This document shows positions 26,835 to 63,928 of a stretch of DNA of 64,000 nt, one piece after another; position 1 is the stretch's first letter, and every line of letters starts with the position of its first letter. Where the stretch lies: the NCBI RefSeq assembly GCF_000150275.1, contig NW_002060976.1, positions 129,626 to 193,625 on the forward strand. Direction: 5' to 3'. Source of the stretch: Trichoplax adhaerens (taxonomy: Eukaryota; Animalia; Placozoa). The notes beneath the pieces are model-generated. The model worked only from the letters and a program-made list of their open reading frames with translations, made no database searches and was not told the origin of the DNA. The translations under genes were made by a program, and so were the position numbers.

Positions 26835-27686
26835 ATGGCTAGTAATGAATTTCAAATTGTAGTTGCTTCTTCGGACCAAGTGAAATGGATTATGAAGATG
26901 GTAGAAGATGAAGGCTGGAACCCTGGATGCAAAGATCCGATCACTTTTCAACTCTCTGATCCATTAGGCATCTTTGTTGGCTTACTCAACGGAGAAGTTA
27001 TCGGCTGCGTAGCAGGAGTCCAGTATGAGGATTTTGGTTTTGGTGGGTTATTTATTATGATGAAAAAATATCGTGGTAAAGGCTATGGCATGAAGTTATT
27101 TCTGCATGCATTGAATCGTTTACGAAAATGTCCAAAAATTGGATTAGATGCAGTGCTTGAACAAGTCAGTAATTACCAAAATGCCGGTTTTCAAACTTTT
27201 CATCACACTATGCGATATATTGGAATAGTTAGTAAGCTAGATTTTCCGTGCAATCATATTGTCGATGCTAAAAGTGTCTCTTTCGACAAATTGCTACAAT
27301 ATGATCGATGTCATTCGCCTGGTCTTCGAAAGTGTTTTCTAGCAGCATGGATTAATCTAGGAACAGATCGTAGCTTAGTGTACTTAGATGATAATCAAAA
27401 TATTCAAGGATTTGGTGCTATTCGTAAAGCTAATGATGGCTATAAAATCGGACCTTTGTACGCAGAAAGTTTCCAAATTGCCGAAAGTTTAATTCATGCG
27501 TTAGCAGGCACATTTGATAAATGCAAACTGGCCTTGGATGTACCCATACCTAATAAAAGTGCTGTAAAGCTTGCCGAGAAATTACAATTAAAGGGAGAAT
27601 TTGAAACCGTTAGAATGTGTTATACTCAACCCTTTACATACGATTGGAACACGGTTTATGGTCTTACTTGCTTGGAACTTGGATAA
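26835..27686 (+). CDS. Intronless bacterial-type two-domain GNAT N-acetyltransferase (GNAT + YitH/Acetyltransf_18-like C-domain), 283 aa
   Basis: EGWNPG motif, acetyl-CoA-binding motif A YRGKGYG, IGLDAVLEQVSNYQNAGF, YKIGPLYA and terminal VYGLTCLELG. Confidence 0.9.
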   Translation: MASNEFQIVVASSDQVKWIMKMVEDEGWNPGCKDPITFQLSDPLGIFVGLLNGEVIGCVAGVQYEDFGFGGLFIMMKKYRGKGYGMKLFLHALNRLRKCPKIGLDAVLEQVSNYQNAGFQTFHHTMRYIGIVSKLDFPCNHIVDAKSVSFDKLLQYDRCHSPGLRKCFLAAWINLGTDRSLVYLDDNQNIQGFGAIRKANDGYKIGPLYAESFQIAESLIHALAGTFDKCKLALDVPIPNKSAVKLAEKLQLKGEFETVRMCYTQPFTYDWNTVYGLTCLELG

Positions 27687-29722: not shown

Positions 29723-30561
29723 TTAGTGGCATGTAAAGCTATAAATTTTCAATAAATCGACGATAGGAGCCTCGCCAGTGTATAAAGTTCCAAATTTAAA
29801 TACTTAGACTAGCTTTAACTTTTCTACTAATGCCTTTCCATGATTATTCGTTTCTGGAAAGTCGAGAGTAATCCTACAATCACTTTTGTGTTGACAAAGA
29901 GACTTTAACAAAATTTCTGCAATTTCTGGTGTTTCAGCGTAAAGTGGGCCTATACGATAACCATTAACACTTTTTCTAATTGCTTCGAAGCCTTTCACTG
30001 TATCTTTATCCATATAAGCTAAGCAATCTGTTGTTCCAGCATTGATCCTCCTGCTAAAAAGTGTTTTCTCTCATCTGCATAAAATCGTGCATCGTATTGC
30101 AGAATTTTATCGAATGGTAAACTACTAGCTGTACAAACGAAGGGACAAGATATTGTACTATTATCCACAGCTCTTGTATATCGAACATTGACATGAGCTA
30201 TTTTAAAACCAGAATTCTGATATTTAGGTGCATGAATTAGTAGTCCATCGACTCGAACATTATATCCATTCAAGTAGTTCACTGAAAGTTGAAATATTCT
30301 CATGCCATGACCTTGACCACGATGTTCTTTGACAACAACATAGTATCCAATAATAGCAATATGATTAAATTTTATTCCAGCTACACAACACACCGGCTTA
30401 CCATTGATAAGGCCAATAAAATATCCACTGGGATCAGCTTGTTGAAATGCGATTGCATCATTATCACCAGGATTCCATCCTTCTTTCCTAGCCATAGAAA
30501 TGATCCATTCGACTTGATCGGACGAAGCTGATACTATCTCAAGATTGGAATTTTCTGCCAT
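29723..30561 (-). pseudogene. Third, more divergent GNAT acetyltransferase copy (frameshift plus premature stop)
   Basis: ORFs 30019-30561 and 29804-30013 join across a 1-nt deletion near 30047 (FLAG[W]INAGTTDCLAYMD). TAA at 29804-29806 is followed by a homologous tail VFKFGTLYTGEAPIVDLLKIYSFTCH. Confidence 0.88.
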
Positions 30562-34842: not shown

Positions 34843-36501
34843 TTACGATACTTCACTATAGAAACGATTGGACCTGAATGGATTTCTAGGCTTAATGTAG
34901 TTCCAAAATACGGAAGCAACGACTACAATAGCGAGACAAGTAATCAGAGTAATGCCCATAATCACTGCTGGTGACACAAAATTAATTCTTCCATAATTAG
35001 GAATTTTCCGACATGGTATGTGAGCGAAATTTGCCAATTGGTTTGGTATATCCAAATAGCTTAAATATGCAGGAGTGCATGTAGGATCTTGACAATGATT
35101 TTGGTAACCGCAGTCGCATTCCTCACCTTCATCGATTATTCCATTGCCACATACAGGGTAGTACTGATCCACAAAACAACTTTGCTGACTTCTTGCTTTA
35201 TTCAGTAAGGTGTGATAAATTGATTGCCGACTACACGGGGAGAATAATAGATTATTTCTTTGCTTTCCGCTTGTAACCGTAGAATGCATTAAATAATCTC
35301 CATGACTTCCTCCAGGAGAGCATCGATGGCTAGCATTATCATGATTCGCACCAAATATGTGGCCCATTTCATGAGCCATGATTAACAGTCTTATTGGGTA
35401 GATTAAGGAGCTTCGATAACGAGAGATAGACATTAGACCAACATTAGAGCTAGATCGGAGGTGATTGTATTGATAATGATATCGTGTGCATACACCCTGA
35501 TCTGCTTCATAACCGCTACTGGCTATTCCAGTTACTTTTAGAGTAAACTGATGATCGATTAGTAGAAACGCCATACAGTACGAGCTGTAATTATAAAGAG
35601 CTGTCCAGTTGCCGAAGTAATATTTTGGATCATCTATATTATCTAAACGACTGAAATTTCTCTTAGCTGAAAAACTTTGTACAGCAAAGCCAATTCCATC
35701 CGCTTTGCCATCGCCGTTAAAATCTGTGCGTCGATAGATCAGGTTAACACCTTGCAATAACACAGAAGCACCAATCAAAGCATGAAATTGGTCCCCATAT
35801 CGTTGGACAACACGATGATCAATTTCAATACGAGCTAAACAGGTCGTTTTATTTGTATCTTTTTTAGTTTGTTCCGAAAATTGTTTCTTACGCAGAAGAT
35901 GACTATACAAATTTGAGGAAGAAAATGACTCTAATGGATCGAAAAGCCATGGTCCGCTTTCTGCTTCTCCACGTCCCTTCCTTGATCGATGTTGAATATC
36001 AACATCTCGGTAGATAATAAACGAATTACGATCGATGAGATTCCTGATATAAAATAGACTGTATTCAATGTAATATTTAATTTTGTTGTGGATAAATACA
36101 CCTTGAAATTGACCGGATGGATAAATGTAACCGTAGGCCTCCGATGTTGGATAAGATTCGACAAATCCCTGTACAAGATGGTGGTGATCGAATAATTTAA
36201 CAGAATTTGGATCTAAGTCAAGAATGAAATTATCATGATAAAGAAGTGGTTGACTACGTAGAACTAATGGGAAAGTTTTTTTATAGGCATGAACTTGAAT
36301 TCGGAAGCGATATGCAAGATTAGTTTTAATATCGGAAGTATTGGTCGCCACTTTAGAATACCCAGAAAATTCTGCATATTCGTAATTTTTAAGATATAGT
36401 ATAGATGATTGCCTTTGCTGCCATTGTAATGCAAGTGTAAACGATTGGATATCAAATACACAAACTAGTAACAAAGTGACAATAAATCTGGCTGATGGCA
36501 T
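34843..36501 (-). CDS. Intronless ADAM10/17-like zinc metalloprotease (signal peptide, prodomain, reprolysin, truncated disintegrin, TM, short tail)
   Basis: HEMGHIFGANHD zinc motif, Met-turn YLMH, NNLLFSPCS, CGNGIIDEGEECDCG and a C-terminal hydrophobic helix. Confidence 0.92.
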   Translation of the reverse strand: MPSARFIVTLLLVCVFDIQSFTLALQWQQRQSSILYLKNYEYAEFSGYSKVATNTSDIKTNLAYRFRIQVHAYKKTFPLVLRSQPLLYHDNFILDLDPNSVKLFDHHHLVQGFVESYPTSEAYGYIYPSGQFQGVFIHNKIKYYIEYSLFYIRNLIDRNSFIIYRDVDIQHRSRKGRGEAESGPWLFDPLESFSSSNLYSHLLRKKQFSEQTKKDTNKTTCLARIEIDHRVVQRYGDQFHALIGASVLLQGVNLIYRRTDFNGDGKADGIGFAVQSFSAKRNFSRLDNIDDPKYYFGNWTALYNYSSYCMAFLLIDHQFTLKVTGIASSGYEADQGVCTRYHYQYNHLRSSSNVGLMSISRYRSSLIYPIRLLIMAHEMGHIFGANHDNASHRCSPGGSHGDYLMHSTVTSGKQRNNLLFSPCSRQSIYHTLLNKARSQQSCFVDQYYPVCGNGIIDEGEECDCGYQNHCQDPTCTPAYLSYLDIPNQLANFAHIPCRKIPNYGRINFVSPAVIMGITLITCLAIVVVASVFWNYIKPRNPFRSNRFYSEVS

Positions 36502-41891: not shown

Positions 41892-44800
41892 TTAAAACAT
41901 TTGCGTTTGTGATACAATGTTATTCAGAGCTACAGCTTCATTTTGAGGATCTTTTATTCTTGAAATAAAGAAGATAAAGCCTGGTAAAGTTAATCCTTGA
42001 CAGGATATAGACACAATATATAAAATCCCAAAGAATCTTCTTGCACTTTCTGGATATCTTATGTTAGTCAATGCCAAAGTTAGCCATGTTAATGATAAAA
42101 TGATCATCAGTATTATGATCGTTTTCAAGAACCTAGGAATATCGTTGCTATGACCCATTTTGAACAGTCTTCGAAGTCGGAATAAAAATAGCAATGCAAT
42201 GATCAATATAAAGCCAATGAAACAGTACATTGGATAAGTAAAGAACCAACTGGCATGATAAGGATTCATCCAACAACTGAAAATAATAAATGTAAAGTAA
42301 TTTTAATAGTAAAATAATCAAAATTACTGAATAAAGCATGAAAGCTGACGCAATATGTCTCCATTTAAATAAGAAGACATCAACAATATTAATTAAACAT
42401 CTCATCAATTGATGTAAAGAATTACATAGAACAATTTCTTTTAAGATTTAATGAGTATAAATAGCCACAGAGCTAAATGAAAGTATATAATAAAACAAGA
42501 ATTTTCTATGTAAGTGTTGCTTACAATCCTGCATAATTACGGCCATAAATTTGGGCTTTACTAGCTGCTACAGAAATTCCAGTTACCAAAGTAGGTACAC
42601 CTTTAAAACAATCATTTAAATAATTTATGATATCCCGTTAAATATTTAGGATATGATGGAGTAGGTTAAGGCTGAATAAATAATTACCCTAAATTTAGTG
42701 TAATGTTGTAATGTAATGATTACTAAACGGCTTCAGTTTAACATTGTATCAACGCAATAATGTATGCTTATGTTGATGTTTAAGTATTAGCAGTATGACT
42801 GAAGAAATTTGCAAAAAATTTGATACATCAGATGAACACATGTTAAGTTGGCTACCATTTAAATTTGAATACCTAACAATTTGAAATATCCTCGTGAATT
42901 TTAAGATTATACTGTTTAATTTGCAAATTAGGTACGCAAGCTATTAAGATAACTGTTTTCATGGTCTTAGTAGAGTGTGACTTAATGCGTTTATCTCTTT
43001 CGTAGCATGAGAACTTATTACAATTTTCCTATAAGCTCATTTTGGCTATTGAGATTATGAAAAAGATCGAGTGCCAAAATGTTAAGTAGGATCTTCTCGT
43101 TAATATAATACTTTTAGTATCAAATTAATCTAAAAGATTTTATAATTCGAATGAAGATTTCATTTTTTTCTAAATAATTCAAATCAGTGCAGTGCGATCA
43201 GTAACAAAATTTTAGGATTTTCTACCGTCAGTCATTTCATAAATCTTTTATTCTTGATTTCAGCTACTGCATAAATCAATTAGAAAATGCTTTCATAACA
43301 TGATTATTTTCGTTTATTTAAGGCAATTAATTTGATAGTTTAACATTCAAGGAACGAATAATTCTTATGCTTGATACGGAAATTCATGAAATTTAAATCT
43401 ATATTGCGAAAGAATGCAATGATTTCTGCTAATTGTAGTAGTACCGTAGGTGGCTAACAGTAACTAGACGGCACACTTATACTGTTTCTAGATTGAAAAT
43501 GGGATTCTCCATTCAAGGCCATATCTGATAGCCAAATACAATATTATGTAGACTGTCTTGCATATAAGAGTTAAAGTATAATTATCTGGTTTATCTTAGT
43601 CAGGTGCATAATAGAGCTTTTACAGTCTTGAACAAGTATATCTACTATAGAGTGGAAGCATTTATTTGTGTAGTTTGTATAGAAGTGATTCGTACGCAAA
43701 TTCATCTAAGTGGCATTGTCTGCTTTATCTAATTCGTTTTCAACTGTTCTTATAAGAAGCAAAAATCAGAATTCTTTTTCGACAGACACACGTAGCTGTA
43801 AATGTTATTATTCAAGGCTATTTTTTCAGTGTTGACCTTTAAATTAGGGAATTACTGAATTTTGTTAACTCAAACATTAGGTTACGTAGGCGAACTAACG
43901 GTAATAGCTGGAGATTATTACACAGTCATTACATAGAACAGAATTAAAATCAGTTCGATTTGTCTAAATGGAAATCAAATCTTGGTGATTTTATGACAAC
44001 TTACCATAGGCAATGGTGACTGCAAGTAGCCGCCATTTTGTAATGTTTACGAATTTTATATCGGAAGAGGCTTTAAGAAGTTCAAAATAGGCGTAAACTG
44101 TAGTAGTAGCCATCCAAAGAATTTTTGAAAACATGAATAAATAGACGAGGATCGATATAATCTTGCATAAGATTTCATTATTGGTGGCTCGTTGAACACC
44201 ATATTGCAGCGAACAGACAACAGCCATGGCAATATATAGATTAATAATCATGAATTTGCCCTCTCCAATTTGTATTTTGCTACATAATAGACAAATACTG
44301 CTAGTTATTAATGCATAAAATACAGAACTTAAAAAATCAATATCGCAGTGTTTACAATTTGAGCGTAGATAATGAATAAGATACTGATATTGAAAATTTG
44401 AAATTTTACAATTACTGTTGCTTTTAGTATTAGTAATTCAACTATTTTCAAAAATTGCGAGACCTACAATAATAGCCCATTTAAATTTCAGTAATGGTAT
44501 TTATGCACGAAATTATCGTAGCTTATACGTAAGTTTAGTAGCCTCTTCTATGTAATTTTGTCTCTAATCATTTATTATGAGATCGTATTTCGACGTTTCG
44601 ATATTTCAGCTACCGGCTTAGTATTAACTAAAACGGTGCAGCTATTTTATAGCAAACGTTCAGTATCTGCTACTAAAAGTCTATGTTCTGAGTTTGTGAC
44701 TGATAAGAGAAGATTTAGTACTCCAATAAATGTAGGAAATATATAATATGAACGAGAACCGATACGAAATCGGTCATTTTGCAAACTGCCAACGAGAACC

Positions 44801-47800
44801 GATTTTGCATCGGTTCTTGTTCATATATACTATGATAGTCCGAATGTAGCGAATGATTTAGCATTGCAGATAGTATTGTAGCTTATATATAAGATTAACC
44901 GCCTCTTCCAATGTAGCTTTGTCCCGAATCGCTTTAATGTGCATTTTAAGTAGTCATTTACTGATATTCTGAAACTTTACCAACAGCTAAACAATAATCA
45001 TAATAGTACAGCTATTATAGCAGACGTTCAGCATATGCAACAATAATTGCATGTTATAAGGTCATGACTGTTACAAATTTTGCTCACCACTCGAACGAGG
45101 AAAATGTTGGTAATCTAACTATTAGAGAGAAGGATTAAAGATAGTACAACTTAATCTATGTATACTCAAATATTTATATTGTCTAATAATAACTACTATT
45201 TACTTATATACCCGTATTACGGTAGCTCTATTTTTAGAACTTTACTATAATATTATTCACTAATTGAAACTTAATAGAGTCTGGTCATCAAATTATCGTG
45301 GGCAGACGCCTGCAATACTAGTTGCAAGTTGCTATTTTTTACAAGAACAATCCAAGAATGCTCACGAGTTACTAACTTCATCCTTTATTTCTTGCTTAAC
45401 AAGTTCTTTATATAATAGCCCATACTTAAGAACTGTCCCTAAGAGCAAATAAAGTCCATGCTTGATATGCTAAGCGAAGAATTTATGATACTGTACATTT
45501 CTTTACGATAATAGTGTAATAAAGTAGGTATGTCAATACTAGATAAGATGGTATGTCAATACTACATAAGATGGTATCCGTACTTATTAATACGAGTACG
45601 TACCACAGTCGGCCAATAATTATAACATACTGATAACTATGCTTGCTCACGGAATCGTAATACAAGTAAAGGTTCCTTATAACTTTGTTAGATCGTATAG
45701 TAATGATCTTGTAATTTAGCAATTAAAATCTAAAATCTACTTAAGAGCAGGTCAAACGTAACTCAGGGTGTTTTTTGTGCAGTAAGAAATTTCATATGTA
45801 ATGGATGATAAAGATTACTATTCTTAAACTTAAATACTACAATTACGACAGTGTTATGTACTGTATTAGAGTAGAAATATCTATGTTAGGATAATTCTGT
45901 TAGCTTATCCTTATTTAGTTAACTTTTAATTTGGATATACTATGTTTCAATATAGCACTGACTTTTTATGACAGTGACACTTTGTTACGGAGCCATGCTT
46001 CGAAATATTAATTGCTATGTTATTTAAAATATCTCATTTAAATTATTGTTTGCTCCAGTAGCTTATTAGATATTAATGTTTATTAATAAGCACTTATTAT
46101 AGCCAAGGTATCAGAAAGTTAAATATTGTTGACGTGTCAGAACTAACATACTTAGTCTGTCAACGTTAATTAATAACACCTTAAGTGTAAGATCAATTAC
46201 TTTGTGGAGCCTTGAGGCTCTAGTTGCTATACTAGGATATGTATACTGTACAGTGTAAGCCGCTATTTCAAAAATATTCACAAGTGTACCATCGGCGAGA
46301 CTATAAAAAGCGGAGCACTAGCTTAGCTTCTCAGTTTCAGTTAGTCATTTGCAGTATCTTTTGACTATTATTGCTAAGAATATTCTTACGTTTTTCTTTA
46401 GTACATTTTACGACTAAGGTTAACGAAAATAAAGTAAAGTATTTAAACCTATTACTCAATAGTAGCTTTTTTGTGTAGCTGAGAGTTAGTTCAACTACGA
46501 TAGGTCCCTAAGTTAGTTAGGAACACAAGTACTAGTGAAGATAGTGTTTAAGACCCGGTTTCTTGTTACAAAGAAGATTTGTAACACACTTATACACATA
46601 CTGAAATTAATAGTTATAATGGGGAATGCAAATCATCTACTTACAGTTCCAATCGTTGTGATTGTAATTTATTTATGGTAGATTGTAAATTATCGTAGAA
46701 ATGTTCCGTGATAGGACATATCGTGATCTGACTATTTCTGTATTAGTCACCAGATGTCTATGTTCGTAAATACTGTTGTCTGCATTAAGGGAGCAGTAGC
46801 TAAAATTAATATCTAATTCAGTAAATGATTCCAAACTTAATCGTACTAACTATGACTCATAAGCTATTGAGGAATGGTATATAAATGCAGTATATCGTGT
46901 AATAAAGTGGATTCTTAAACTTAGCATTTAACGTAAAATATGAGGCGTATAAGTCTTTGTATAATCTGCTAGTAAAGCAAAAGTGTTTGTGATAGTGCAG
47001 ATATCGTTCCTTGATACATGGTTCAAGGAATTGACTTATTGATCGTACACTACGTTTTCTTGTTGCAAAGCTGTTTTGTGACAACAATTAGAAATTGTTC
47101 TAAAACAATATTGATGTATTTACATGATTAAGTTAATGCTACGACCCGAGATAATATTTAAGATAAGAGAGATTGTAACTAAAAGACCATGTATAAGAAC
47201 TTTTTTGTATACCTACTGCTGCTATGAACTCTAAATCAGGAATAGTAATATCGAAAAATAACTTTCTGCACAAGATTTTTCTTCATAAATAGGGTATTCT
47301 CATAAAGCAAAAGCAGTCGCAATTGTTGAGGAGGGTCATAGCTATGGCTTTTGACTTTGAATCTCAATTATATCCTATTCTTTCTTGTTATTACATTGGA
47401 TTACTGTTATGATTCTGTATATTATATTTTATCGCGATCATATTTAGTACCAATATGTTTATGCATATCGCTATTTGGTGATCAATAATGGTAGGATTTT
47501 TCGCTTCGAAGAAGGCGAAATGTTATTTTCTAATTGCAATAGTCGTAAGTGGTGCAATCTCAAATAAGCTCAAGACTAAGATAATAGGACTGTACGTAAA
47601 TAGATACAATGTAAGCTATATCGTAAGATTGCATAAGTGTCTTACTTAACGAAATTGGAGTACAAATACAAACATAATATGTTAAAATGACGTATCTATT
47701 CACTCTCAGTAACAGAAGCATAACAAAAGGAAATTTCTGTAATTAATCAATTAAGTCTTTATGGAATTAAAGATGCACAATTAAAACTAATCTAATCGGT

Positions 47801-50800
47801 TAAAATCACATTTACCATTTCGATCTCCAATAGATGAATGAAATAAGGATTGATGCTAACGACAAGCCACTGCAGATTTCTGTTATAAGCCTTATTGCAT
47901 AGTTGTAACCCGTGACGGACCGAACTTTTCGTAATTTTTCGTAGTGATTTATAGCAGGATGTTTTGGGTATGTCGACTACAAAATATTGGATAGTTTAAG
48001 TAGCTCTTAAATAAATTTCCATTACTATAAGTTATAAATAATCGAGTAAGAATATCCGATCTTGGTAGAAGTTTGATACCTTCACCTTTACTATTAGTTT
48101 TGATTTATAAATTCGCACTAAGTCAATGAGGCATATAAACAGATATAAATACTATTTATCATACATGTTTATTTGTCAAATTAGCAGTTCCATTTATTGG
48201 ACTATGGCAATGTATAACTTTACGATATATGCTCTATTTAGTCTAACAGTTTCGTTTTCTGTGCTTATTTTGTTCTAAATCTACCAATGCAGCCAACCAT
48301 TAGTCCATATCTCAGTTACTATAGCTATCGTACTCGTTAGTACGATCTACTGATCCGCATAACATCTTAACTACTAGCATATCAATTTATATTTAACAAC
48401 CGCTATTTTCTTGCGAACCACACACTACAATAAACAGCCTATATTAAAGTGAGATGGTAAATTATAATCTCTGATGATCACTGCAAATGATTTTACTCAT
48501 TGATCAAATCCTCAATACTTTATTGAAGCTATCATCGTTTCTATAAGAATTTGAATTAATGCCATTAAAGTTAATTAAGCCTTAAATAATCCAATCACCT
48601 GCGACAACTTGCAAAGTCTAGGGACCAGCTGTAACTGACCAATATGGCCTTTATTCATAGCTTGATTCCAAATACGCTTGAAATTTATATGTCTGAAGCC
48701 AGTATTAACATAGTATTGAGTTTGAAGTATCGATATTATTTCCAAAACGCCACTGACAATTAAGTGATAATATATGGTAAAGAAGGAAATAGGTATAAAT
48801 ATTTATTTTAATGCATTTATTGCCCTCTTAGCCGTCAATAATTACACTATAGTTACTTTATCCTTATAATAAAGTGTCCCTAATTACCAATAATTATACT
48901 TGAAGTGTAGAACAGATTTGAGTACTAAGCCTATAATCACGTTGTATAATAAATCGCAAAAGTCACAGTAATTATTTCAGCTAGTTACAGTAGCAATCTG
49001 AAGAAAGATTTGCTCTTGATGTAAATTAATTCGACGGGCTTTATGTAGTAATTCTATAATATTGATATTACGAAACGATGCACTTGTATCACGTTAGAAG
49101 TTTGACCAATTGTAATGTCTAAAATTTAGAGTCAGTGTATTGGGAATCTAAGGATTAAAATCTTTCTTTAAAGCTAACATTTTAATATATTATGAAATCT
49201 TAAATAATCCCGTGGCATTAAACTAAGATAAGAAGTTGGAAGATCTCTAAAGTATAATTAGTTAAGCTACTCGTAATTTCTGGCTTCGATTAAATCGAAT
49301 CTACATACGAAATACTTAATTAGAGCTAAATATCCCTACTATTGAAACACTTATCCTTTTTTTCAACAGCAGATGCTAAATTAAAGTTCATGAATTTAAA
49401 AGCAATGGCGATAACGTCTACGAAATTTTACTAAAATCACAATCCAAGACTAGATAAGGAGCGACCATACTAATCTCTAATTTCCATATTTTCTCTATTG
49501 TAAATTGATAAAGTACTGTGCACACAGGGTTGATTAAGATAATGTATAACTCCTAGTTATGTATGCGTGCATGCACATGTCAATACCCTAGGGTTACCTG
49601 CAATTTCTTAGATTGGTTCTTGGTGATGAATTTTGGACTGAAGACGGTAATTCATCCAATGTTTGACAGTAAGGCAAGTTTCTATCCAGCAGATGTAAAA
49701 TAAAATAAGGAATTAAAGAAAGTAAAAGATAAATAATAATTAAAAAATAAGTAATAAATAATATAATGATGCTAAAAGATATTTCGAGATATTTCGCAAA
49801 AATGGATATCTCAAATTATTGCAAATAATGATATTATAAGTCTAATTAGTTCTTAAATTATATGTTCCCTTAGTTTTTTTCCAATAGAAGTCTCTAAGGT
49901 ACCTTATTTTTATTTAAGGCGCCATAGAACTACTATAATGTAACTATCTGGTATAGTTTGATGGGATAGACTTAATCGCTAGATGCTTTAAAATCTTGTA
50001 AGATTGTACTGAGAGGTTAAGCATAACAATGTGAACTAATTTATTAAAAAAGGGCTGTTTGCAGTATCTAAAATTAATAAAATAACGAACGTGTTACGAA
50101 ATAGCGAATCTCAGGATCTTTCTGGTTAAGCTTTGCTTTTATTAAATATGTTTATTCTTTTAATCAGATCTGACAGATATTTAAAACTGGTTGTATCATA
50201 CAAGTTGAGCTTAATTATTTGATTGAAATAGCAATAAATTGGCGTATTTCTCATTTCTTTTATTATTGAATGTGAATAATGCGCCTAATCTGTATATTTT
50301 ATTACTAAACTAATTCATAATAGAATGCACGCAATAATCTGATTGAGTTGGCCATAAATTGCCATAGTTATTTATTCCTCTTCAATTTCCCAACTTAATT
50401 CAATGTAAGCAAATGCAATCAGTATGGTTTTATAGTATTCAAAAGTCATTATATTCGTAAGTAGAAGCTACACTGTCACAAAGGCCAAAAGACCCTATCT
50501 GTACTATAAATTGATTTTTAAGCAGTTAATTTACACATTCAAAGTCTTGAGCATACACAATTACTTCAGTGACTTTGAATAGAATATAATAAAGCACTAA
50601 TAATTTCATATAAATATCTAGAACAAAGTGAAGGCTGAGATAAATTCTACTGAGCATTCATAAACGTAATAGTCGAGCATGTTTCAAATTGTCTAGCCCG
50701 ATTGTTGCATATGTTATGGTGTTATGAACAATGAAGGCATCACTAAATGCAATTTTATTTTCATATGCCAGACTTTATGATAGCATAAAACTAGTGAAAT

Positions 50801-52410
50801 CTTACCTGGTACTTTCCAATTTTAAAACTGTGTGATTTGCACTGTCCCCAGAAAATAGCTTGACAATCTATTAAAGTGGTAATTTTGCATTAAGTTGAAA
50901 TACATTACTGATACGTTAAATATGTATAAATAAATTTTAAAGCTATAAATGGAGATCTTTTCCTTATTCGTAAGTAAATTTTTATGACCCTAATTAAATG
51001 AAGTAACCTTATTATGAAGGAGACGTTAACTAAGTAAAGAGATCAGAAAGTATAGACTTCATAATTGCATCAATATACTCGTTTCTTGTGCGCATATAAT
51101 ATTAATCAAATATTATAGTACTCATAACAACTTTGAACTAGTGGCATAAGGATTTCTATTATAAATTTTTAAAATTAATTTTTTTCTCGCTGATTTATCT
51201 TGAAATCTATTGTTATCCTGACTTAGCAATCCTTCAAAAAACGAAGCATAAATCATATCTAGACTTTCTCAGACAAGGCACATAACATCTTGATCATACG
51301 CACAAAAGTTGTAAGCCGTATGATCATGACAGTAAATGAATATGCAGCTACTAACACTAGCTTCGAATTACATTTACTCGATCATAGCAATACGTGACAA
51401 ATTATTGGGAAGTTTAATATCGATCTTGATATAACGTAATCTTAACAGATAATAAACAACTACTGATTTGACGTTTTTGGTATTCAAGAACTAATATTTC
51501 ATTTTCAACGGTATCTGTAGAAGCTAGCACTATACTTCAAGATAATATAAAGCCAATAAATATGATATCGATTCAATTAAATCATATACTCGTAAGAAGA
51601 ATTCCACTGACGCTATATTGTAATTGATATATTAAATATTTAAGTAAAGTTATCAAAATATATTTAAAGCTTTCAGTTATGTAATCACGACCAACTATGT
51701 AAGTCTAGAATAAAAGGATTAAAAAATTCATGAAAATAAACTCAATGTTCTATAGCATACAGTTTTTTGGATGTCTTTCGTTAGCTGTGGAGAAATATCA
51801 AAGTTTCCTGTCTCCCTTAAGGAATTGAACTCCAGATTTTTGATAACCAAGCTGCAATTCCAGTGAAGTCGTTTTATAGGGCTATTGGTTGCACCTTCAA
51901 TAGGAAAATAATTCATACGATTTTACGAATGTAAAAATGTTGTGGTTATAACAAGACCCAAATTTATCTGTGTTATAAGATGCCGTTAAGCTTCGCAAGA
52001 GATAATTCAATGATTAGCAATTTAACCAGTTTTGGTAGCGTAATTGATATTCTTATTATTGTTATCTAATAATTAAATGATTATCACATAACCGAATACA
52101 TCTTAAATTATTAGAAAAAAGTTTGTAGTTTGTAATACATAATATCTCTTATAATTAATATTACCTAATATATCCTAGCTGCATGTATATCAATCAGTGT
52201 AATATACCAACGAATTAACGTGACAAAAAGGATTTTTTATTCAAAATGTATAGAGTATTTCAGTTAAATTATAACATTTAAGACTTGTTAATTAATTAAT
52301 CTAATTGTAAAATTCCTCAAATAATTTTACAGACAGGATTACTAACCGGCACTTGTTAGTCCCAGGAGCACTAATAGTAAAATTGCAATCATTTTTCTCA
52401 ATGCGCTCAT
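41892..52410 (-). CDS. Signal peptide + SEA-like domain + family-B/adhesion-type 7TM receptor, 9 exons, 464 aa
   Basis: Exons 52347-52410, 51761-51894, 50806-50867, 49598-49681, 48599-48752, 47816-47976, 44005-44279, 42525-42600 and 41892-42276. All introns are GT-AG with compatible phases, and the exons total 1395 nt with no internal stop. Signal peptide MSALRKMIAILLLVLLGLTSA. TM motifs ICSGLSLASILISF, MIINL, LCKIISILVYLFMFSKILWM, AYGVP, YG...CW and SCQG. Confidence 0.85.
44746..44826. repeat. Mini fold-back element (~29-bp imperfect terminal inverted repeats, TA-rich flanks); possible MITE remnant
   Basis: ATATGAACGAGAACCGATACGAAATCGGT ... ACCGATTTTGCATCGGTTCTTGTTCATAT. Each arm is itself a hairpin. 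Confidence 0.6.
45529..45578. repeat. 23-bp tandem duplication
   Basis: GTATGTCAATACTA(G/C)ATAAGATG x2 followed by GTAT. Confidence 0.75.
45844..47083 (+). mobile_element. Solo LTR family A, copy 1 (~631 bp net, interrupted by a nested LTR), in a GPCR intron
   Basis: Highly similar to 63300-63928. Perfect TSD ACAAT (45839-45843 / 47084-47088), ends in TGTGACA, TATATAAA at 46878, AATAAA at 46901. Confidence 0.85.
45983..46586 (+). mobile_element. Solo LTR family B (604 bp) nested inside LTR-A copy 1
   Basis: TGTTAC...GTAACA termini, perfect TSD CACTT (45978-45982 / 46587-46591), TATAAAA at 46302 and AATAAA at 46428. It is absent from the paralogous site at ~63435. Confidence 0.9.
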
Positions 52411-53363
52411 ATTTTGGCTTTCTTTACTGCGGTGATTATTGTAGCATTAAGAGAAATGAAAATAAATCTTGAGTAAGATCGCAAGCCCTAAAATATCGTC
52501 GTTACTGTACTGTAGCGCATATAGATTTCTTATCATACATGCCCTTATATGTATACAACTGGTCTGCTTTGGTGGAATAATTCATTTGAAAATGACTATT
52601 TGACGTTAATAATAGATTATCTTGAAATGAAAAGAGTTCAAAGTTTAAAATTTGATGACGCTTGACAAGAAGACTTTAGCGAAATACAAAACATCCTTGA
52701 TATTGGTAAAATACGGGTAATTCAGTACGAATAGTTATTCATATACGTATAATTCTCATTTAATTAATGAATAGTGAATGAAAACTAGCTCAATTGAGGC
52801 ATTAGATATTAAAATTATATAATAGATAGAACGACAGTTATATTCATCCATTCTCCTTTTAAGTATAGCCAACAATGACACGCAGACATTTCAAATAGAA
52901 GAGCTAAACTCTTTTGTTGTTAAGGTTAAATATTGATGGATACTATTCCATGCGAAACCGTTTTTAGCCTCAATTAAGCTAATTAATTTAAAGATATTTG
53001 TTAGTCTACCCATTCCTAAATTATTAGCGATGCATGATACTTGCTACCAAAATTAGCTGCTGGAAGGAATTCTGAAAATTCAATTTTAATATGGAGTTAG
53101 GTAGTTAGGATTGTAGATCTCACGAATGCTTATTGGCTAGAATCATGTAAATACACGTAAAGCATTCTTTACAATTTCTGTCAATTTTTAAGCTAATAAA
53201 AGGAATAAGCCATATCCTGGTGTATTTGCTTTTGACATATTGCCATAATCATTGTAAAGCAGAAATTATATTAAATGACCCATTTGCGTAAGGTTACAAA
53301 TATTGAGTTGCTAGATGATAGATTTTGCAGAGATTAAATTTTCAGAAGTTAGTCTTCCGACGC

Positions 53364-53789
53364 TGTTACAGTGGTATGGAAATGTTCCGTGATAGGACAT
53401 ATCAGAATCTGACTATTTTGTATTTTTAGTCATTAGACGTCTGTGTTCGTAAATACCGTTGTCATTAGGCGGTGTTTCATTAGGCAGCACTAGGTAAAAT
53501 TAGCTATTGATTCATAGGTAGGTTTCAATGTTTATATCACTAACTAGGATATCTAAACTATTGTAAAAGAGTATATAAATGCGGTATATCGCACAGTAAA
53601 GTTAGTTCTTAACAATTAGTGTTTAACGTATAATATGAGGGGTCGAAGTCTTTGTGTAGTCTAATATTATATAATAATTATAGTAAAAAAGTTCATGATA
53701 GAGTAGATATTGCTCCCTGATACGCGGTTCAGGGGATTGACCTATTGATCGTGCATTACTTTACCTTGTAGCAAAGCTGTTTTGTCGCA
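53364..53789 (+). mobile_element. Solo LTR family A, diverged and shorter copy (426 bp)
   Basis: Starts TGTTACAGTGGTAT, then jumps to the shared GGAAATGTTCCGTGATAGGACATATC core, and ends GCAAAGCTGTTTTGTCGCA. Flanks GACGC / GACAC. Confidence 0.78.
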
Positions 53790-58226: not shown

Positions 58227-59837
58227 TTAGGAAATTAAATCCATTAACTGCTGATTATTAGTTGTTTTTGATTTTCGAATGCACTGCTTCCAGACAACAG
58301 TAAAAAATACACTAATGATTAATGTGCCAATTAAACCCGCAACAACATATATTATAGCAAATTGATTGGATTGATTGCAATTAGGGATTCTCCGACAAGG
58401 TGCGTTGCCAGACATATCCATAAAACTATGAAAAGCTGGAGTGCAGCAAGAATCATTACAATTGCTTTGATATCCGCAATCGCATTCTTCTCCTTCATCT
58501 ATAATTCCGTTACCGCATATTGGATAATGCTGATTAATTAAGCACCCACGCTGCTTATTCCAACCTTTTGTGACGATGGAATGATAAATTGCTTGTCGAC
58601 TACACGGAGAAAATAAATAATTATTCATTTTTTCCCCACTAGAAACTGCTGCATGCATAAGATAAAACCCTTTTTCGCCAGTCGGTGAACATAACTTGGT
58701 AAAGTTATCGTGTTTAGAACCAAATATATGGCCAATTTCGTGGGCTGCAATCATTTCACGTAAAGGATAGATTAAAGTTTTACTTAGTCGAGACACTGAT
58801 AATAAACCTACGTTAGAACTGGACAGAACTCCATTGTCTTCATAATGATATTTAGTACAGATTCCTTCGTCAATTTTGTAGCCACTATTTGCAATTCCTG
58901 TCACTTGCTGCTTGAAATGATGATCTATGAATAGAAATCCCATACAGTATTGACTGTAGTTATAATAGGCCGTCCAATTATTGAAGTAATATGTTGGATT
59001 CGCTATCGGATCCAACCGACTAAAATTCGTTTTTGCTGAAATAGATTGGATAGCAATGCCAATGCTGTCGGCTTGTCCATCGCCATTAAAGTCAGTCTTC
59101 CTGAAGATTTGATTAACGCCTTGCAGTAATACCGAAATACCAATAAGAGCATGAAATGGATCGCCATAGCGTTGAAGAACATGCCGATCAATATCAATAC
59201 GTGCCAAACAGGTATTATTGATATTGTTAAAATTATGATTCTGCTGTCTAGCTTGCCTCGTATTTAAATGATGATTGTAAGATGCAAAAGATGAAAATAA
59301 CGGATCATGTAACCATCTGTCGGAAGATTGAACATCCCTAGAAGCTCGAAAGCGTGAACTAATATCGATGTTGCGATAGATGATGAACTGATTACCGTTG
59401 CTTGCTAATGAAGGAAAGAATTTTGCGTATTCGACGTAGTATTTAACACGATCAAGAGTGAAGACGCCTTGAAACTGACCAGAATTATAGATGTATCCAA
59501 ATGCTTCCGTTTCAGGATGTGATTGGATTGAGCCATATACAAAATGTGATCGATCAAAGGAAGCTATGGTGCTAGGATCAAATTCTAATACTAAATCAGA
59601 ATGAAATAGTAGTGACTGACTATGTAAGACTAACTTAAATACTCGATTATAAGCTTCGACTTGCAATTCAAACTGATAAACGTTGCTATGCTGATTGGAA
59701 GAATTGAACAGTGCTTTAGAATAAGAAGTAAACTTAGGAACTTGATAATCCTTAAGATAGGCAACCTTACCACTTGAGCATAGAAAAATGTCACAGCTGA
59801 TTATCGTTATGACGAGGAGGAGCGATGATTTAATCAT
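58227..59837 (-). CDS. Second intronless ADAM10/17-like metalloprotease, paralog of 34843-36501
   Basis: Likely ATG at 59837 (MIKSSLLLVITIISC signal peptide), HEIGHIFGSKHD, YLMH, CGNGIIDEGEECDCG and a C-terminal TM helix. Confidence 0.92.
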   Translation of the reverse strand: MIKSSLLLVITIISCDIFLCSSGKVAYLKDYQVPKFTSYSKALFNSSNQHSNVYQFELQVEAYNRVFKLVLHSQSLLFHSDLVLEFDPSTIASFDRSHFVYGSIQSHPETEAFGYIYNSGQFQGVFTLDRVKYYVEYAKFFPSLASNGNQFIIYRNIDISSRFRASRDVQSSDRWLHDPLFSSFASYNHHLNTRQARQQNHNFNNINNTCLARIDIDRHVLQRYGDPFHALIGISVLLQGVNQIFRKTDFNGDGQADSIGIAIQSISAKTNFSRLDPIANPTYYFNNWTAYYNYSQYCMGFLFIDHHFKQQVTGIANSGYKIDEGICTKYHYEDNGVLSSSNVGLLSVSRLSKTLIYPLREMIAAHEIGHIFGSKHDNFTKLCSPTGEKGFYLMHAAVSSGEKMNNYLFSPCSRQAIYHSIVTKGWNKQRGCLINQHYPICGNGIIDEGEECDCGYQSNCNDSCCTPAFHSFMDMSGNAPCRRIPNCNQSNQFAIIYVVAGLIGTLIISVFFTVVWKQCIRKSKTTNNQQLMDLIS

Positions 59838-62800
59838 GGTAAAATAACCAGTTAAGATTATATTTTCAAAGTGCGAAATTAAGAGCAATGAAGGCAGCAG
59901 TAAAATTTAAAAGCTTGATATCAGCGATAAAATTGGCCTAGCCTACTTATAATGATTCGCGTAAGAATTTAGGAATTTACTAAGTATATCACCGGATCTT
60001 GGTACAATGTTGCTGTGGCTTTTAATCCTGAAAGAAGTTATTCGATCAATCTGAGCAATCTTATAATTTACGAATAATAAATATAAGAACAACATTGAAA
60101 ATTTAAAATAAAAGTTTGAATAAAACATAAAATTATATAAATATGATACAATTTGATAAATTAAGGTCTAACTTACAAAAGTTGAATTTGCTATAATTAA
60201 CTATTTATTCCAATTGACGATATCAGATTAACATTTAATGAAGCAGCTGCAGACGTTGATCATGAAATCGGTGAATAATTGATGTTTTTGAAGACAGAAA
60301 CTTCCTTTGGTATCAGAAATAGCCCAGTAAAATACTTTGTTTAAATGAGATATCGAAATTCACATTTCTTTGCAAAGTATACATCACTCTAACGTTTAAT
60401 AAAGTTCAAATAAGGATACTATTAAATCAAAGATTTCGAAAACCTAACTTTTCTTATCGATTTATTCAGGTATTTCATTAGCAGGTGATAATGAATGAGA
60501 ACATGATAAGAACTACAAGTTAATTCTGGTAATGCATTTTGGCATTAATGCAGCCCGAGGTTGATTTAAAATTTGTGAAATTGAGTAGAGTTAAAGTCGT
60601 TTCATTGATTGCAAATTGGATAATATTATGAGCAGACATTAAGAAATTCTATATTAACAACTTCGTTTTAGCATTCCTTTCGCCACAACGTAAAAAATTG
60701 CGTTATGATACCAAGTGAGGTAACTTTTACTTGTTCCAGAATATCGTGAACTCGATTTTGAATAATTAAATGAAGCGCGATGTAAATATTTCTATATAAC
60801 CTGAAAAAGCATATTAATTAACACCTGGCCTACGCATATGTCACGCATGATTACTCAGTTGGTAAAATATATTTCGAAAATATTTTAAAGTTAAGATCAA
60901 TGGATGTAAATACTATTATCAGATCGCTTCATCGATTACTCAAACGAACGAAATGACGGAAAATAATCATGTTCGGTTAATCAATTTTACTTATTTTCTC
61001 AAGTAAAATTTCGATAATCATAGTTCCATCCAAAACATTATCTCTGTTACCTAGATTAGAATAAAATTTTCTGTTCATAAATCCAAAAACAACTGCAAGT
61101 AGTCTACTGAAGCATAGTTAAGACTGCATTCTGTATATGTGTCAAATTTTTTTGACAGAGATTCGTTTTCAAACTGAAAACTACCATAAAGCCTTATGAA
61201 GCCTCAATAGCCCAATATATTCGATTCTTAATCAATTAATAACCTGTTAACATATGAGAGGGGTTCAATCTTAAAAGCTTATGGAATGAAAGCCACAAAA
61301 TCCGATCTATTAGGCATAAATAGTTCTGAACCCGTAATTATGAATTAATCAAGATTTATTAGGCTGTACTCTAGCTAGAGTAAATTGTAAAACATTTAAA
61401 GCATATTACAATATAATCCCTCTGAACACGCAAAAGATAATTTTTTAATTACGATCATAGACACATTGCCATTCATAGCTGTGCTATAAATCTCTAAATT
61501 CGATTTGCGTTACAAAGCAAACTATTCACTTTTTTTAAATAAAAGATTATCTCACCATTGGATCAATAGGCTTTACTAATTCTGATAAGGTCTCAGATTG
61601 AAATCGATAATAATAAGCTTTAACCCTATCTTAGACAAAAAATTGTTCTTGAGGCTATAATAAGTAAAGGATACCGACGTAAAATTGCAATGTGTAATAA
61701 TGGGAAAGCGACCCTGATTGCTTTCTTTATCCATGCTTTAAGGTTATTATTCCAATATGAGATAATTCATGTTACAATATCAGTATGTCCTTTTTCGGTA
61801 AATTATTAAATCAGTATCCGTACAGCATATCACATCAAATAATATACTGAACTGTCTTTCTGTATCAGTTCCGTAGAAGATGCAGGTATGAAGTTGATCA
61901 ACAATTTAAATTACGAATTTGAAAATACTACATAGGATTATTGAGATCCAATCATTATTTTTCTATACATTTATCACGCAAGCTTGACGTAAGTCAATAA
62001 AATAGATTTCCATGATTCCGCCGTTCTTTTTCGCCTATTTAATAATCAATACTGCTGCAATGTTTCCGTCCGTAAATAAAAAGGCGATAGCTGAATATAA
62101 ACTGATTTCAATAATATTGATTAAACAAATATATTCTTAATGAAAAGTAAAAAAGTTTAAGGAAGCACCTTATGTAATATAATATTAATGAATACAATTT
62201 TTAGTCTGGCAAAATACTGTTCTTAAGAGGTTAAAATAAAATTGCCCTTATCTTGTAATGCATTTAGCTAAAGATAATTTTCTATTTATATTCTTAAATT
62301 TGCTTTTTACTGTTCTTAATTTATTAATATATTAATACCACATTTCCCCTTTAAGCTTATGATTGAACTATTACATTCTGATCATGATGCATAAGTAATC
62401 AAGCAGTTTTAAAGCACTCGATCGTCAGTATTTTATAGCGAAGTCTGTCGTCATAAAACTAGATGCACTAAGCAAACGAATATTCTATAACCGATGCTTC
62501 ATTACGAATATCATTCTACTTAGTAGAAATAGAATCAAGTCGTACGCTTCCTCAAAATGGCAGAGTAGAAATTCTTATAAGATGATTCACCTATTTCACT
62601 GTCTGACGCCAAGTTCAGAAATGTATAACGAAATATTTATATTGACATTGCCGGACTTGAGCAATGCACTCTTCCAGATTTCTTCTCCTTAGATTTGTAG
62701 GATGCTGAAAGTTGCAATCCAATATTCTACCCACCGCTTTTTCAATTACAATACTGCATAGTAGAAAGGATCAACCTTATGTGTAGTAAGTTAGAATAGT

Positions 62801-63299: not shown

Positions 63300-63928
63300 T
63301 GTGACAGTGTTATATACTGTATTACAGTAGAAATATCTATGCTAGGATTATTCTGTTAGCCTATCCTATTTAGTTAACTTCTAATTTGGATATACTGTGT
63401 TTTAATATAGCACTGACTTTTTATGACAGTGATACATATACTTATACTGAAATTAACGGTTATAATACGGAATGCAAATCATCTACATACAGTTCCAATC
63501 ATTGTGATTGTAATTTACTTATGGTAGATTGCAAATTATCGTGGAAATGTTCCGTGATAGGACATATCGTGATCTGACTATTCTGTATTAGTCACCAGAT
63601 GTCTATGTTCGTAAATACTGTTGTCTGCATTAAGGGAGCAGTAGCTAAAATTAATATCTAATTCAGTAAATAATTCCAAACTTAATCCTACTAACTATGA
63701 CTCATAAACTATTGAGGAAGAGTATATAAATGCAGTATATCGTGTAATAAAGTGGATTCTTAAACTTAGCGTTTAACGTAAAATACGAGGCGTTTAAGTC
63801 TTTGTGTAGTCTGCTAATAGAGCAAAAGTGTTTCCGATAGTGCAGATATCGTTCCTTGATACGTGGTTCAAGGAATTGACTTATTGATCGTACATTACGT
63901 TTTCTTGTTGCAAAGCTGTTTTGTGACA
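63300..63928 (+). mobile_element. Solo LTR family A, uninterrupted copy (629 bp)
   Basis: TGTGACAG...TGTGACA termini, flanks ATCAT / GTCAT, TATATAAA at 63723 and AATAAA at 63746. Confidence 0.85.

What the first reader, a model, noticed from the sequence alone, without database searches (positions are those of the whole stretch)
41892..52410. GAIN-less SEA-domain 7TM receptor assembled from 9 scattered exons
Seen: nine phase-compatible exons give a 464-aa open frame. It has a signal peptide, then an ectodomain HWNCSLVIKNLEFNSLRETGNFDISPQLTKDIQKTIVKLF...GVLEIISIL...FKRIWNQAMNKGHIGQLQLVP, a short stalk and a family-B-type 7TM with a very short C-tail. The ORF track shows only three of these exons. 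Known: adhesion GPCRs almost always carry a GAIN/GPS domain directly before TM1, and in ADGRF/ADGRG6 the SEA domain occurs together with GAIN. Inference: the ectodomain follows the SEA pattern, and there is neither room for GAIN nor a C-x-C-x-H-L-T/S motif. This would be a minimal SEA-7TM receptor architecture, possibly a mechano- or protease-sensor that uses SEA in place of GAIN.
Basis: partly seen in the sequence, partly recalled or inferred. Interest (0 to 1): 0.8.

Follow-up and report, generated by a model that had tools for sequence, protein, structure and literature searches.

The report
Placozoan adhesion-type receptor, SEA-like head, no GAIN
This is a real nine-exon Trichoplax gene for a small adhesion-class G-protein-coupled receptor whose whole outer part is one probably SEA-like domain instead of the usual GAIN domain; it is a diverged member of a small placozoan-only family, but nothing shows that the domain self-cleaves or takes over GAIN's job.

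Summary
Nine minus-strand exons (52410 to 41892), all GT-AG and phase-compatible, give 1395 nt, or 464 aa plus stop. The same structure is annotated in Trichoplax sp. H2 as RDD39088.1, "G-protein coupled receptor 126" (485 aa, with 21 extra N-terminal residues). The contig is Trichoplax adhaerens, not human.

The 7TM is adhesion-class, shown through kin. The gene itself gets no Pfam hit. Its paralog TRIADDRAFT_57516 aligns with it over ectodomain and 7TM (E 4e-28), hits 7tm_2 at 2.4e-20, and matches only adhesion GPCRs in the PDB.

No GAIN, GPS or Stachel is present. Whole-genome scans place none near this gene or its relatives, and no motif occurs in any frame of the exons or introns. Intron 6 holds a high-copy repeat.

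The SEA reading is probable, not proven (about 0.7). There is no Pfam SEA hit. The family profile's best PDB match is the MUC1 SEA domain (E 0.11), and protein-language-model neighbours are SEA clusters (0.86 and 0.92). Both AlphaFold models are poor.

There is no G-S-V-V-V cleavage motif. The 84-nt exon encodes a Cys-bounded loop kept in three paralogs. At least six genes share the head. Verdict: a new variant of a known kind, of moderate interest.

The parts
52347..52410 (-). Coding exon 1: start codon and signal-peptide-like leader. It ends in phase 1 with a GTTAGT donor.
   Evidence: 100% identical to P0001 residues 17-43.
51761..51894 (-). Exon 2: beta1 and most of alpha1 of the SEA-like domain, with the motif I-K-N-L-E-F-N-S-L.
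   Evidence: Paralog counterparts carry the motif L-x-I-K-N-R-P-Y. This part of the family profile aligns with beta1-alpha1 of the MUC1 SEA domain.
50806..50867 (-). Exon 3: end of alpha1 and beta2.
   Evidence: Paralog counterparts found.
49598..49681 (-). Exon 4 (84 nt, phase 2 to 2): a loop closed by two Cys (Y-C ... C). It sits where canonical SEA domains self-cleave.
   Evidence: A homologous Y-C...C loop is present in P0004 and in paralogs L017 and L018. It is included in the H2 model.
48599..48752 (-). Exon 5: beta3, alpha2 and beta4 of the SEA-like domain. This is the best-conserved ectodomain exon.
   Evidence: Own-genome matches at 2e-9 to 4e-4 for the single exon and at 1e-26 to 7e-16 for its profile. 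Alignment A5.
47816..47976 (-). Exon 6: hydrophilic stalk of about 25 aa, then TM1.
   Evidence: TM1 exons of paralogs align. Helix 209-240 in the P0001 model.
44005..44279 (-). Exon 7: TM2, TM3 (with the conserved Cys and W-M motif) and the start of TM4.
   Evidence: The counterpart exon of paralog L003 hits 7tm_2.
42525..42600 (-). Exon 8: end of TM4 and part of extracellular loop 2.
   Evidence: The ortholog exon is seen in metagenome scaffold L032.
41892..42276 (-). Exon 9: the C-W of loop 2, TM5-TM7, a short tail and the stop codon.
   Evidence: Counterpart exons of paralogs hit 7tm_2 at 1e-8 to 1e-11.
52514..52585 (-). Possible upstream exon used by the H2 model. It would add 21 residues in front of the signal peptide; its status is uncertain.
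   Evidence: tblastn of P0001 residues 1-24 gives only 67% identity here.
46698..47079 (+). Dispersed high-copy repeat inside intron 6. It helps explain the long intron and is not an exon.
   Evidence: 644 first-look candidates in the genome; the 39 other copies scored are 92-96% identical. Related copies seen.

Best explanation
The locus is an intact nine-exon Trichoplax adhaerens gene. It is a fast-evolving member of a placozoan-restricted family of adhesion-class (Pfam 7tm_2) GPCRs; at least six genes share the ectodomain and up to nine share the TM5-7 exon. The family's entire ectodomain is a signal peptide, one alpha/beta module of about 140 aa that is most likely a diverged SEA domain, and a hydrophilic stalk of about 25 aa. 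A disulfide-closed loop sits between beta2 and beta3 of the module. GAIN, GPS and a tethered-agonist (Stachel) peptide are absent. The SEA self-cleavage motif is also absent. I therefore infer that the receptor stays in one piece. On this reading the SEA-like module works as a small ligand- or contact-sensing cap that talks to the 7TM through the stalk and extracellular loops, and not as a cleavable force switch. Shown: the gene structure, homology to adhesion 7TMs, absence of GAIN/GPS, and family-wide conservation of the architecture. Inferred: the SEA fold (about 0.7), the lack of cleavage, and the activation mode.
For: Gene model. Identical architecture in RDD39088.1. The H2 locus is 98.4% identical over 15.5 kb, with exons differing at 0.57% against 1.38% for introns. 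An ortholog fragment from a more distant placozoan in a metagenome scaffold is 44.5% identical and keeps the same short tail and the G-L-T-L-P-G-F insert. 7TM class: P0001 against P0004 gives E 4e-28 over residues 72-475; P0004 hits 7tm_2 at 2.4e-20; all 23 PDB matches of P0004 are adhesion GPCRs, ADGRG2 best at 3.6e-21; P0001's own best PDB match is ADGRG6 at 1e-3. No GAIN/GPS: 64 GPS and 12 GAIN matches in the genome, none on this contig or near any relative. No GPS, Stachel or SEA-cleavage motif occurs in any minus-strand frame across the exons and introns. In paralog L017 the head exon and the TM1 exon lie about 230 bp apart; in a second placozoan, L030, they lie about 160 bp apart. In paralog L019 the signal peptide and beta1 share one exon. 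SEA-likeness. The secondary-structure order is E-H-E-E-H-E in P0001 and H-E-E-H-E in the N-truncated P0004.
Against: Pfam gives no SEA hit and no 7tm_2 hit for this gene itself. Profile-profile comparison with six canonical Trichoplax SEA domains is not significant (E 0.28; 0.037 for a single local comparison). Both AlphaFold2 models are poor (pLDDT 53 and 54, pTM 0.31 and 0.33). Their Foldseek hits are non-significant and mix SEA (1ivz, rank 4) with other small alpha/beta folds. No transcript or protein data were available, so splicing, inclusion of the 84-nt exon and the true start codon rest on gene models. The five amino-acid and three silent differences from H2 are too few to show strong constraint.
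Confidence: 0.6

Rival explanations
1. One reading: the SEA-like module replaces GAIN functionally. It would be cut by itself or by a sheddase, would hold the two halves together non-covalently, and would release or unfold under force to switch the 7TM on.
For: The domain lies next to the membrane, as SEA and SEA-like modules do in mucins and Notch (established knowledge). An exposed Cys-bounded loop sits exactly at the canonical cleavage turn. The gene is flanked by two ADAM10-like metalloprotease genes, which may be coincidence.
Against: No G-S-[VI]-[VI]-[VI] motif occurs in the gene or in any frame of the locus, and none is conserved in the paralogs. The stalk before TM1 is hydrophilic, with no T-x-F-x-x-L-M-like agonist. 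No dibasic furin site was seen in the loop. No experiment bears on it.
Confidence: 0.12
2. The ectodomain is not SEA. It is another small alpha/beta sandwich or a placozoan-specific fold that only mimics the SEA pattern.
For: Every SEA-specific statistic is sub-threshold. Foldseek on the AlphaFold models returns ribosomal S10-like proteins, FliF ring-building motifs and OsmC alongside SEA. ESM structure rows also include non-SEA proteins.
Against: Of 177,635 distinct PDB sequences, the profile's best hit is a SEA domain in the correct beta1-alpha1 register. Two paralogs only 24-27% identical each get SEA clusters as their top three language-model neighbours; one scores 0.92 with 178 shared features.
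Confidence: 0.23
3. The gene model is incomplete or the gene is decaying. Either more 5' or intronic exons, possibly encoding GAIN, exist, or this diverged copy with long introns is a pseudogene.
For: The introns are long for Trichoplax (up to 3.5 kb). The 7TM is too diverged for Pfam. The tail is short. The H2 model adds an upstream exon.
Against: A signal peptide directly precedes beta1. No GPS or GAIN signal exists on the contig. Intron 6 carries a high-copy repeat. The compact paralogs have the same architecture. The frame is open in H1 and H2, and an ortholog at 44.5% identity keeps the frame and the tail.
Confidence: 0.05

Closest known systems
ADGRG6/GPR126 and ADGRF1/ADGRF5 (adhesion GPCRs that contain a SEA domain)
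   Same: An adhesion-class 7TM and a SEA-type module in the ectodomain. ADGRG6 is the best PDB match of this protein's 7TM. The H2 ortholog is even named GPR126.
   Different: Those receptors place HormR and GAIN/GPS between SEA and TM1 and signal through a Stachel peptide. They also carry further domains (CUB and pentraxin in ADGRG6). Here SEA-like is the only domain and is joined to TM1 by a stalk of about 25 aa. It does not match Pfam SEA or SEA_Gpr126.
Adhesion-class receptors without GAIN/GPS: human ADGRA1/GPR123 and the short sponge adhesion GPCRs
   Same: A 7tm_2 core without a GPS site and with a short N-terminus. Twelve of 40 Amphimedon adhesion GPCRs lack GPS (PMC4302439). Human ADGRA1 has no GAIN (PMC11697300).
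   Different: Those are described as having no recognised ectodomain. This family keeps a conserved folded module with a signal peptide.
Membrane-proximal SEA and SEA-like modules: MUC1, MUC16, TMPRSS/enteropeptidase, and the non-autocleaving SEA-like modules of Notch and dystroglycan (the last two from general knowledge)
   Same: The juxtamembrane position and the beta-alpha-beta-beta-alpha-beta order. beta1-alpha1 aligns with MUC1 SEA. Top ESM structure rows include TMPRSS-type SEA proteins.
   Different: The anchor is a 7TM receptor, not a single pass. There is no G-S-V-V-V site. A Cys-closed loop of about 20-28 residues is inserted at the cleavage turn.
Secretin (B1) and Methuselah (B3) receptors
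   Same: Family-B 7TM receptors that use a compact non-GAIN ectodomain and are not autoproteolysed (PMC4768249).
   Different: No HRM or Methuselah_N match. The paralog's 7TM matches only adhesion GPCRs in the PDB, not secretin receptors.

Membership tests
Adhesion GPCR (class B2, Pfam 7tm_2 PF00002) | Seven-helix core homologous to 7tm_2, adhesion branch | tested here: met
   Met only through kin. The gene and P0001 have no Pfam hit. P0001 aligns with P0004 at E 4e-28. P0004 hits 7tm_2 at 2.4e-20 over positions 5-249 of 250 and matches only adhesion GPCRs in the PDB. Paralog exons hit 7tm_2. The loop-2 C-W, the TM6 L-x-L-x-W and the TM7 Q-G are conserved.
Adhesion GPCR (class B2) | GAIN domain with a GPS motif directly before TM1 | tested here: not met
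   Six-frame genome scans give 64 GPS and 12 GAIN matches, none on contig C1381 or near any relative. No C-x-C...H-L-[ST] occurs in any frame of the locus. The mature ectodomain is only about 165 aa.
Adhesion GPCR (class B2) | Tethered agonist (Stachel, T-x-F-x-x-L-M-like) upstream of TM1 | tested here: not met
   Regex search of all frames. The stalk is hydrophilic in this gene and its paralogs. PDB alignments of P0004 start only at TM1.
SEA domain (Pfam PF01390; PF25307 SEA_Gpr126) | Match to the family model above its curated cut-off | tested here: not met
   No hit for the exons, P0001 or P0004. Genome scans with PF01390 find 12 other loci, and PF25307 finds none.
SEA domain | Remote sequence similarity in the right register | tested here: inconclusive
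   Family profile against the PDB: best hit MUC1 SEA (2acm_A) at E 0.11 over beta1-alpha1. hhalign against Trichoplax SEA domains: E 0.28 and 0.037. ESM Atlas feature neighbours are SEA clusters at 0.86 (P0001) and at 0.92 with 178 shared features (P0004).
SEA domain | Alpha/beta sandwich fold with beta-alpha-beta-beta-alpha-beta order | tested here: inconclusive
   The secondary-structure order fits. The ESM model aligns to SEA-containing proteins at TM 0.57-0.62. AlphaFold2 confidence is low, however, and the Foldseek hits are non-significant and mixed.
SEA domain (autoproteolytic subgroup) | G-S-[VI]-[VI]-[VI] self-cleavage site in the beta2-beta3 turn | tested here: not met
   Absent from the gene and from every frame of the locus. 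It is not conserved in the paralogs. A Cys-bounded loop occupies the turn.
Secretin-type (B1) or Methuselah-type (B3) receptor | HRM or Methuselah_N ectodomain | tested here: not met
   No such Pfam hit for P0001 at E up to 5 or for P0004 at E up to 1. The PDB matches of P0004 at E up to 1e-5 are all adhesion GPCRs.

The most novel reading that the evidence does not exclude
Placozoans evolved an adhesion-class GPCR lineage in which a SEA-type module stands where GAIN normally does. This SEA-type module belongs to the other great family of membrane-proximal, force- or protease-gated domains of animals. Its inserted Cys-bounded loop would act as a regulated cleavage or unfolding site that gates the 7TM. 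That would be an independent, minimal solution to mechano- or protease-sensing by a GPCR.
Probability: 0.12. Interest if true: 0.8.

Novelty: new variant of a known kind. Interest (0 to 1): 0.45.

Why it matters
In holozoans, adhesion GPCRs are defined by the GAIN/7TM pair (PMC12716839). Receptors that break this rule show what the 7TM can do without a tethered agonist. This family is small (about 460-660 aa), conserved across placozoan lineages, and has a single folded head. That makes it a convenient natural test case for how an adhesion-class 7TM is controlled by a non-GAIN juxtamembrane domain. If the SEA assignment holds, it is also a SEA-to-7TM fusion that I found in none of the papers I could search. 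The practical gain is modest: the H2 annotation "GPR126" should be read as "adhesion-class, GAIN-less, SEA-like head", not as an ADGRG6 ortholog.

Tried and rejected
Pfam on single exons and on P0001 gave nothing useful.

The word-indexed protein search returned only the queries themselves plus P0004. In one search I set the threshold too strictly (1e-8), so that blank says little.

The exhaustive representative search with the last exon found only three proteins.

MAFFT alignments of exon fragments were partly scrambled (A1, A7, A8). I used A6 and A9, in which only a few short fragment ends are misplaced. I also built a block-wise alignment in a script.

AlphaFold2 on P0001 and P0004 with shallow alignments gave pLDDT 53 and 54. 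Foldseek on these models gave no hit below E 0.01, so the fold test is inconclusive. I did not run the VIA searches, because they drop low-confidence stretches and would have dropped the ectodomain.

Considered and rejected:
- GAIN exons hidden in the introns.
- A secretin or Methuselah affiliation.
- The 84-nt exon being a dispensable cassette. It is conserved in paralogs, although skipping would keep the frame.
- A human origin of the contig.

A 7TM tree against GAIN-bearing Trichoplax receptors was not built, because the own-genome profile search returned only the family itself. No complex prediction was run, since no binding claim is made.
Full report
**Origin of the contig**

The window is AT-rich eukaryotic DNA (about 32% GC). 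It lies in a 105.6-Mb genome of 1414 contigs. A public protein of Trichoplax sp. H2 (P0001, RDD39088.1) maps to it at 93-100% identity. The H2 locus is 98.4% identical over 15.5 kb. Earlier notes of this scan also call the genome Trichoplax adhaerens. It is not human.

**How the spliced model was handled**

Exons were searched one by one, by reference. The contiguous public ortholog P0001 and the paralog P0004 served as stand-ins. In one search the exons were concatenated once inside a script, only to count length and stop codons. That product was neither printed nor searched.

**Observation**

Nine minus-strand exons run from the ATG at 52410 to the stop at 41892. All have GT-AG borders and matching phases, and they total 1395 nt, or 464 aa. 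P0001 has the same blocks plus one upstream exon that adds 21 residues before the signal peptide. From its second Met it is 464 aa long.

Introns measure 248-3536 bp. Intron 6 contains a 382-bp dispersed repeat with at least 644 first-look candidates in the genome. This explains part of the unusual length without any hidden exon.

Between T. adhaerens and H2 the exons differ at 8 of 1395 sites (0.57%), against 1.38% in introns. That is consistent with constraint but rests on few sites. A metagenome scaffold from a more distant placozoan (L032) carries the last two exons of an ortholog. It is 44.5% identical in protein and keeps the same short tail and the same small TM7 insert. The gene is therefore old, kept and fast-evolving.

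**The seven-helix core**

Neither the exons nor P0001 hit any Pfam GPCR model. P0001's best PDB match is the ADGRG6 7TM at E 1e-3, followed by Smoothened.

The genome holds paralogs with the same exon layout.
- Their last exons hit 7tm_2 at 1e-8 to 1e-11.
- One paralog has a public model, P0004 (TRIADDRAFT_57516). It aligns with P0001 from the ectodomain to TM7 at E 4e-28.
- P0004 hits 7tm_2 at 2.4e-20 over nearly the whole model.
- All 23 of its PDB matches below 1e-5 are adhesion GPCRs (ADGRG2, L3, G4, D1, G6, E1, E5, F1 and others). None is a secretin receptor.

The loop-2 C-W, the TM6 L-x-L-x-W and the TM7 Q-G are invariant in the family. The core is therefore adhesion-class, and this gene is a diverged member.

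**No GAIN**

Six-frame Pfam scans of the whole genome find 64 GPS matches (60 over the cut-off) and 12 GAIN matches, so the method does see such exons here. None lies on this contig or within 100 kb of any family member (compared with the places). A pattern search of all three minus-strand frames from 41892 to 52700, introns included, finds no GPS-like, Stachel-like or SEA-cleavage motif.

The mature ectodomain is about 165 aa, against about 320 aa for a GAIN domain (PMC3321182). The compact paralogs make the point independently:
- In L017 the last ectodomain exon and the TM1 exon are about 230 bp apart.
- In the L017 ortholog of another placozoan (L030) they are about 160 bp apart.
- In L019 the signal peptide and the first strand share one exon.

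**The ectodomain**

Six genes share it. Exon-by-exon counterparts could be placed for most parts. Conserved features are:
- a first strand L-x-I-K-N-R-P-[YWF];
- a helix ending in L-F-x-G;
- a strand G-N-[YH]-x-V;
- a loop bounded by Y-C and C;
- a strand-helix-strand exon with I-W-x-x-A-M-x-x-G-x-I-G.

Tests for SEA gave the following.
- Pfam SEA and SEA_Gpr126 do not match.
- hhalign against six canonical Trichoplax SEA domains (A4, which carry G-S-I-I) gives E 0.28. With my block alignment it gives 0.037 for one local comparison, in the expected register.
- The family profile (A6) searched against all 177,635 distinct PDB sequences has the MUC1 SEA domain as its best hit (2acm_A, E 0.11; also 6bsb_A, E 0.15). 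The alignment covers the first strand and helix. The E-value is not significant by itself. However, SEA domains are a tiny share of the PDB, so a chance top hit of exactly this family in the right register is unlikely.
- ESM Atlas neighbours of P0001 residues 44-190 are SEA clusters (0.86-0.84). The Atlas model of that part aligns to SEA-bearing proteins, among them TMPRSS-type proteases and a CUB/pentraxin/SEA_Gpr126 cluster of ADGRG6 type, at TM 0.57-0.62.
- The paralog P0004, residues 1-128, gives SEA clusters at 0.92 with 178 shared features.
- AlphaFold2 with the shallow family alignments failed to give confident models (pLDDT 53 and 54). The strand and helix order fits SEA. The Foldseek hits are non-significant and mix a MUC16-type SEA (1ivz, rank 4) with other small alpha/beta folds.

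I rate the SEA assignment at about 0.7.

**What this means for mechanism**

Canonical SEA domains cut themselves at G-S-V-V-V in the beta2-beta3 turn. Here that motif is absent. The turn is occupied by a loop of about 20-28 residues closed by two Cys. This loop is encoded by the 84-nt exon, is conserved in P0004, L017 and L018, and is included in the H2 model. The exon is thus a standing part of the domain and not an obviously optional cassette, although skipping it would keep the reading frame.

The stalk before TM1 is hydrophilic and shows nothing like a tethered agonist.

The most economical reading is an uncleaved receptor whose small head binds a ligand or partner and acts on the 7TM directly. 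The two ADAM10-like genes that flank the locus are noted only as a curiosity.

**Comparison with known systems, and novelty**

Adhesion GPCRs with SEA (ADGRG6, ADGRF1, ADGRF5) always keep GAIN between SEA and TM1. GAIN-less adhesion-class receptors are known: human ADGRA1 (PMC11697300) and 12 of 40 sponge receptors (PMC4302439). These are described as lacking N-terminal domains. Family-B receptors with other compact heads exist in the secretin and Methuselah groups (PMC4768249). I found no paper describing a SEA-to-7TM fusion or naming these two proteins.

The gene itself is already in public annotation under a misleading name. I class it as a new variant of a known kind, of moderate interest.

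Noticed in passing
window 34843-36501 (-) and 58227-59888 (-): Two intronless paralogous ADAM10/17-like metalloprotease genes (Reprolysin_2 at 1e-20 and 1e-18, a weak sub-threshold disintegrin match, a C-terminal TM) flank the receptor gene on the same strand.
   Followed up: partly
window 46698-47079; also 63544-63924 and, diverged, 53379-53785: A 382-bp dispersed repeat with at least 644 first-look candidates in the genome at 92-96% identity, probably a SINE- or MITE-like element. One copy sits in intron 6 of the receptor gene.
   Followed up: partly
window 15526-20160 (-): A single open frame of 1544 aa made of many kinesin-light-chain-type TPR repeats, apparently intronless. Read from the translation only.
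   Followed up: no
window 25055-25429 (+), 26835-27686 (+), 30019-30561 (-): Three related ORFs, which another first-reader note (s1-751129) calls a bacterial-type GNAT acetyltransferase triplet. The family was not checked here.
   Followed up: no
window 1135-1216 (-): One tRNA gene (Rfam RF00005, 56 bits).
   Followed up: no
L030, L031, L032 (ENA metagenome assemblies ERZ23499115 and ERZ27263980): Scaffolds labelled as metagenome carry placozoan receptor genes. The exons of L030 are 72-82% identical in DNA to T. adhaerens. L032 holds the 44.5%-identical protein ortholog of the window gene. So DNA of another placozoan lineage is present in those samples.
   Followed up: partly
G000:C1412:7139977-7140540 and 7142464-7142718: Two further TM5-7 exons related to the family (E 1e-29 and 2e-16). 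No ectodomain exon was found for them by the profile, and no GPS lies nearby. Their heads were not examined.
   Followed up: no
L018 about 6230-6630 (G000:C1411, about 7256230-7256630): A run of N (assembly gap or withheld stretch) inside an intron of the paralog on C1411.
   Followed up: no
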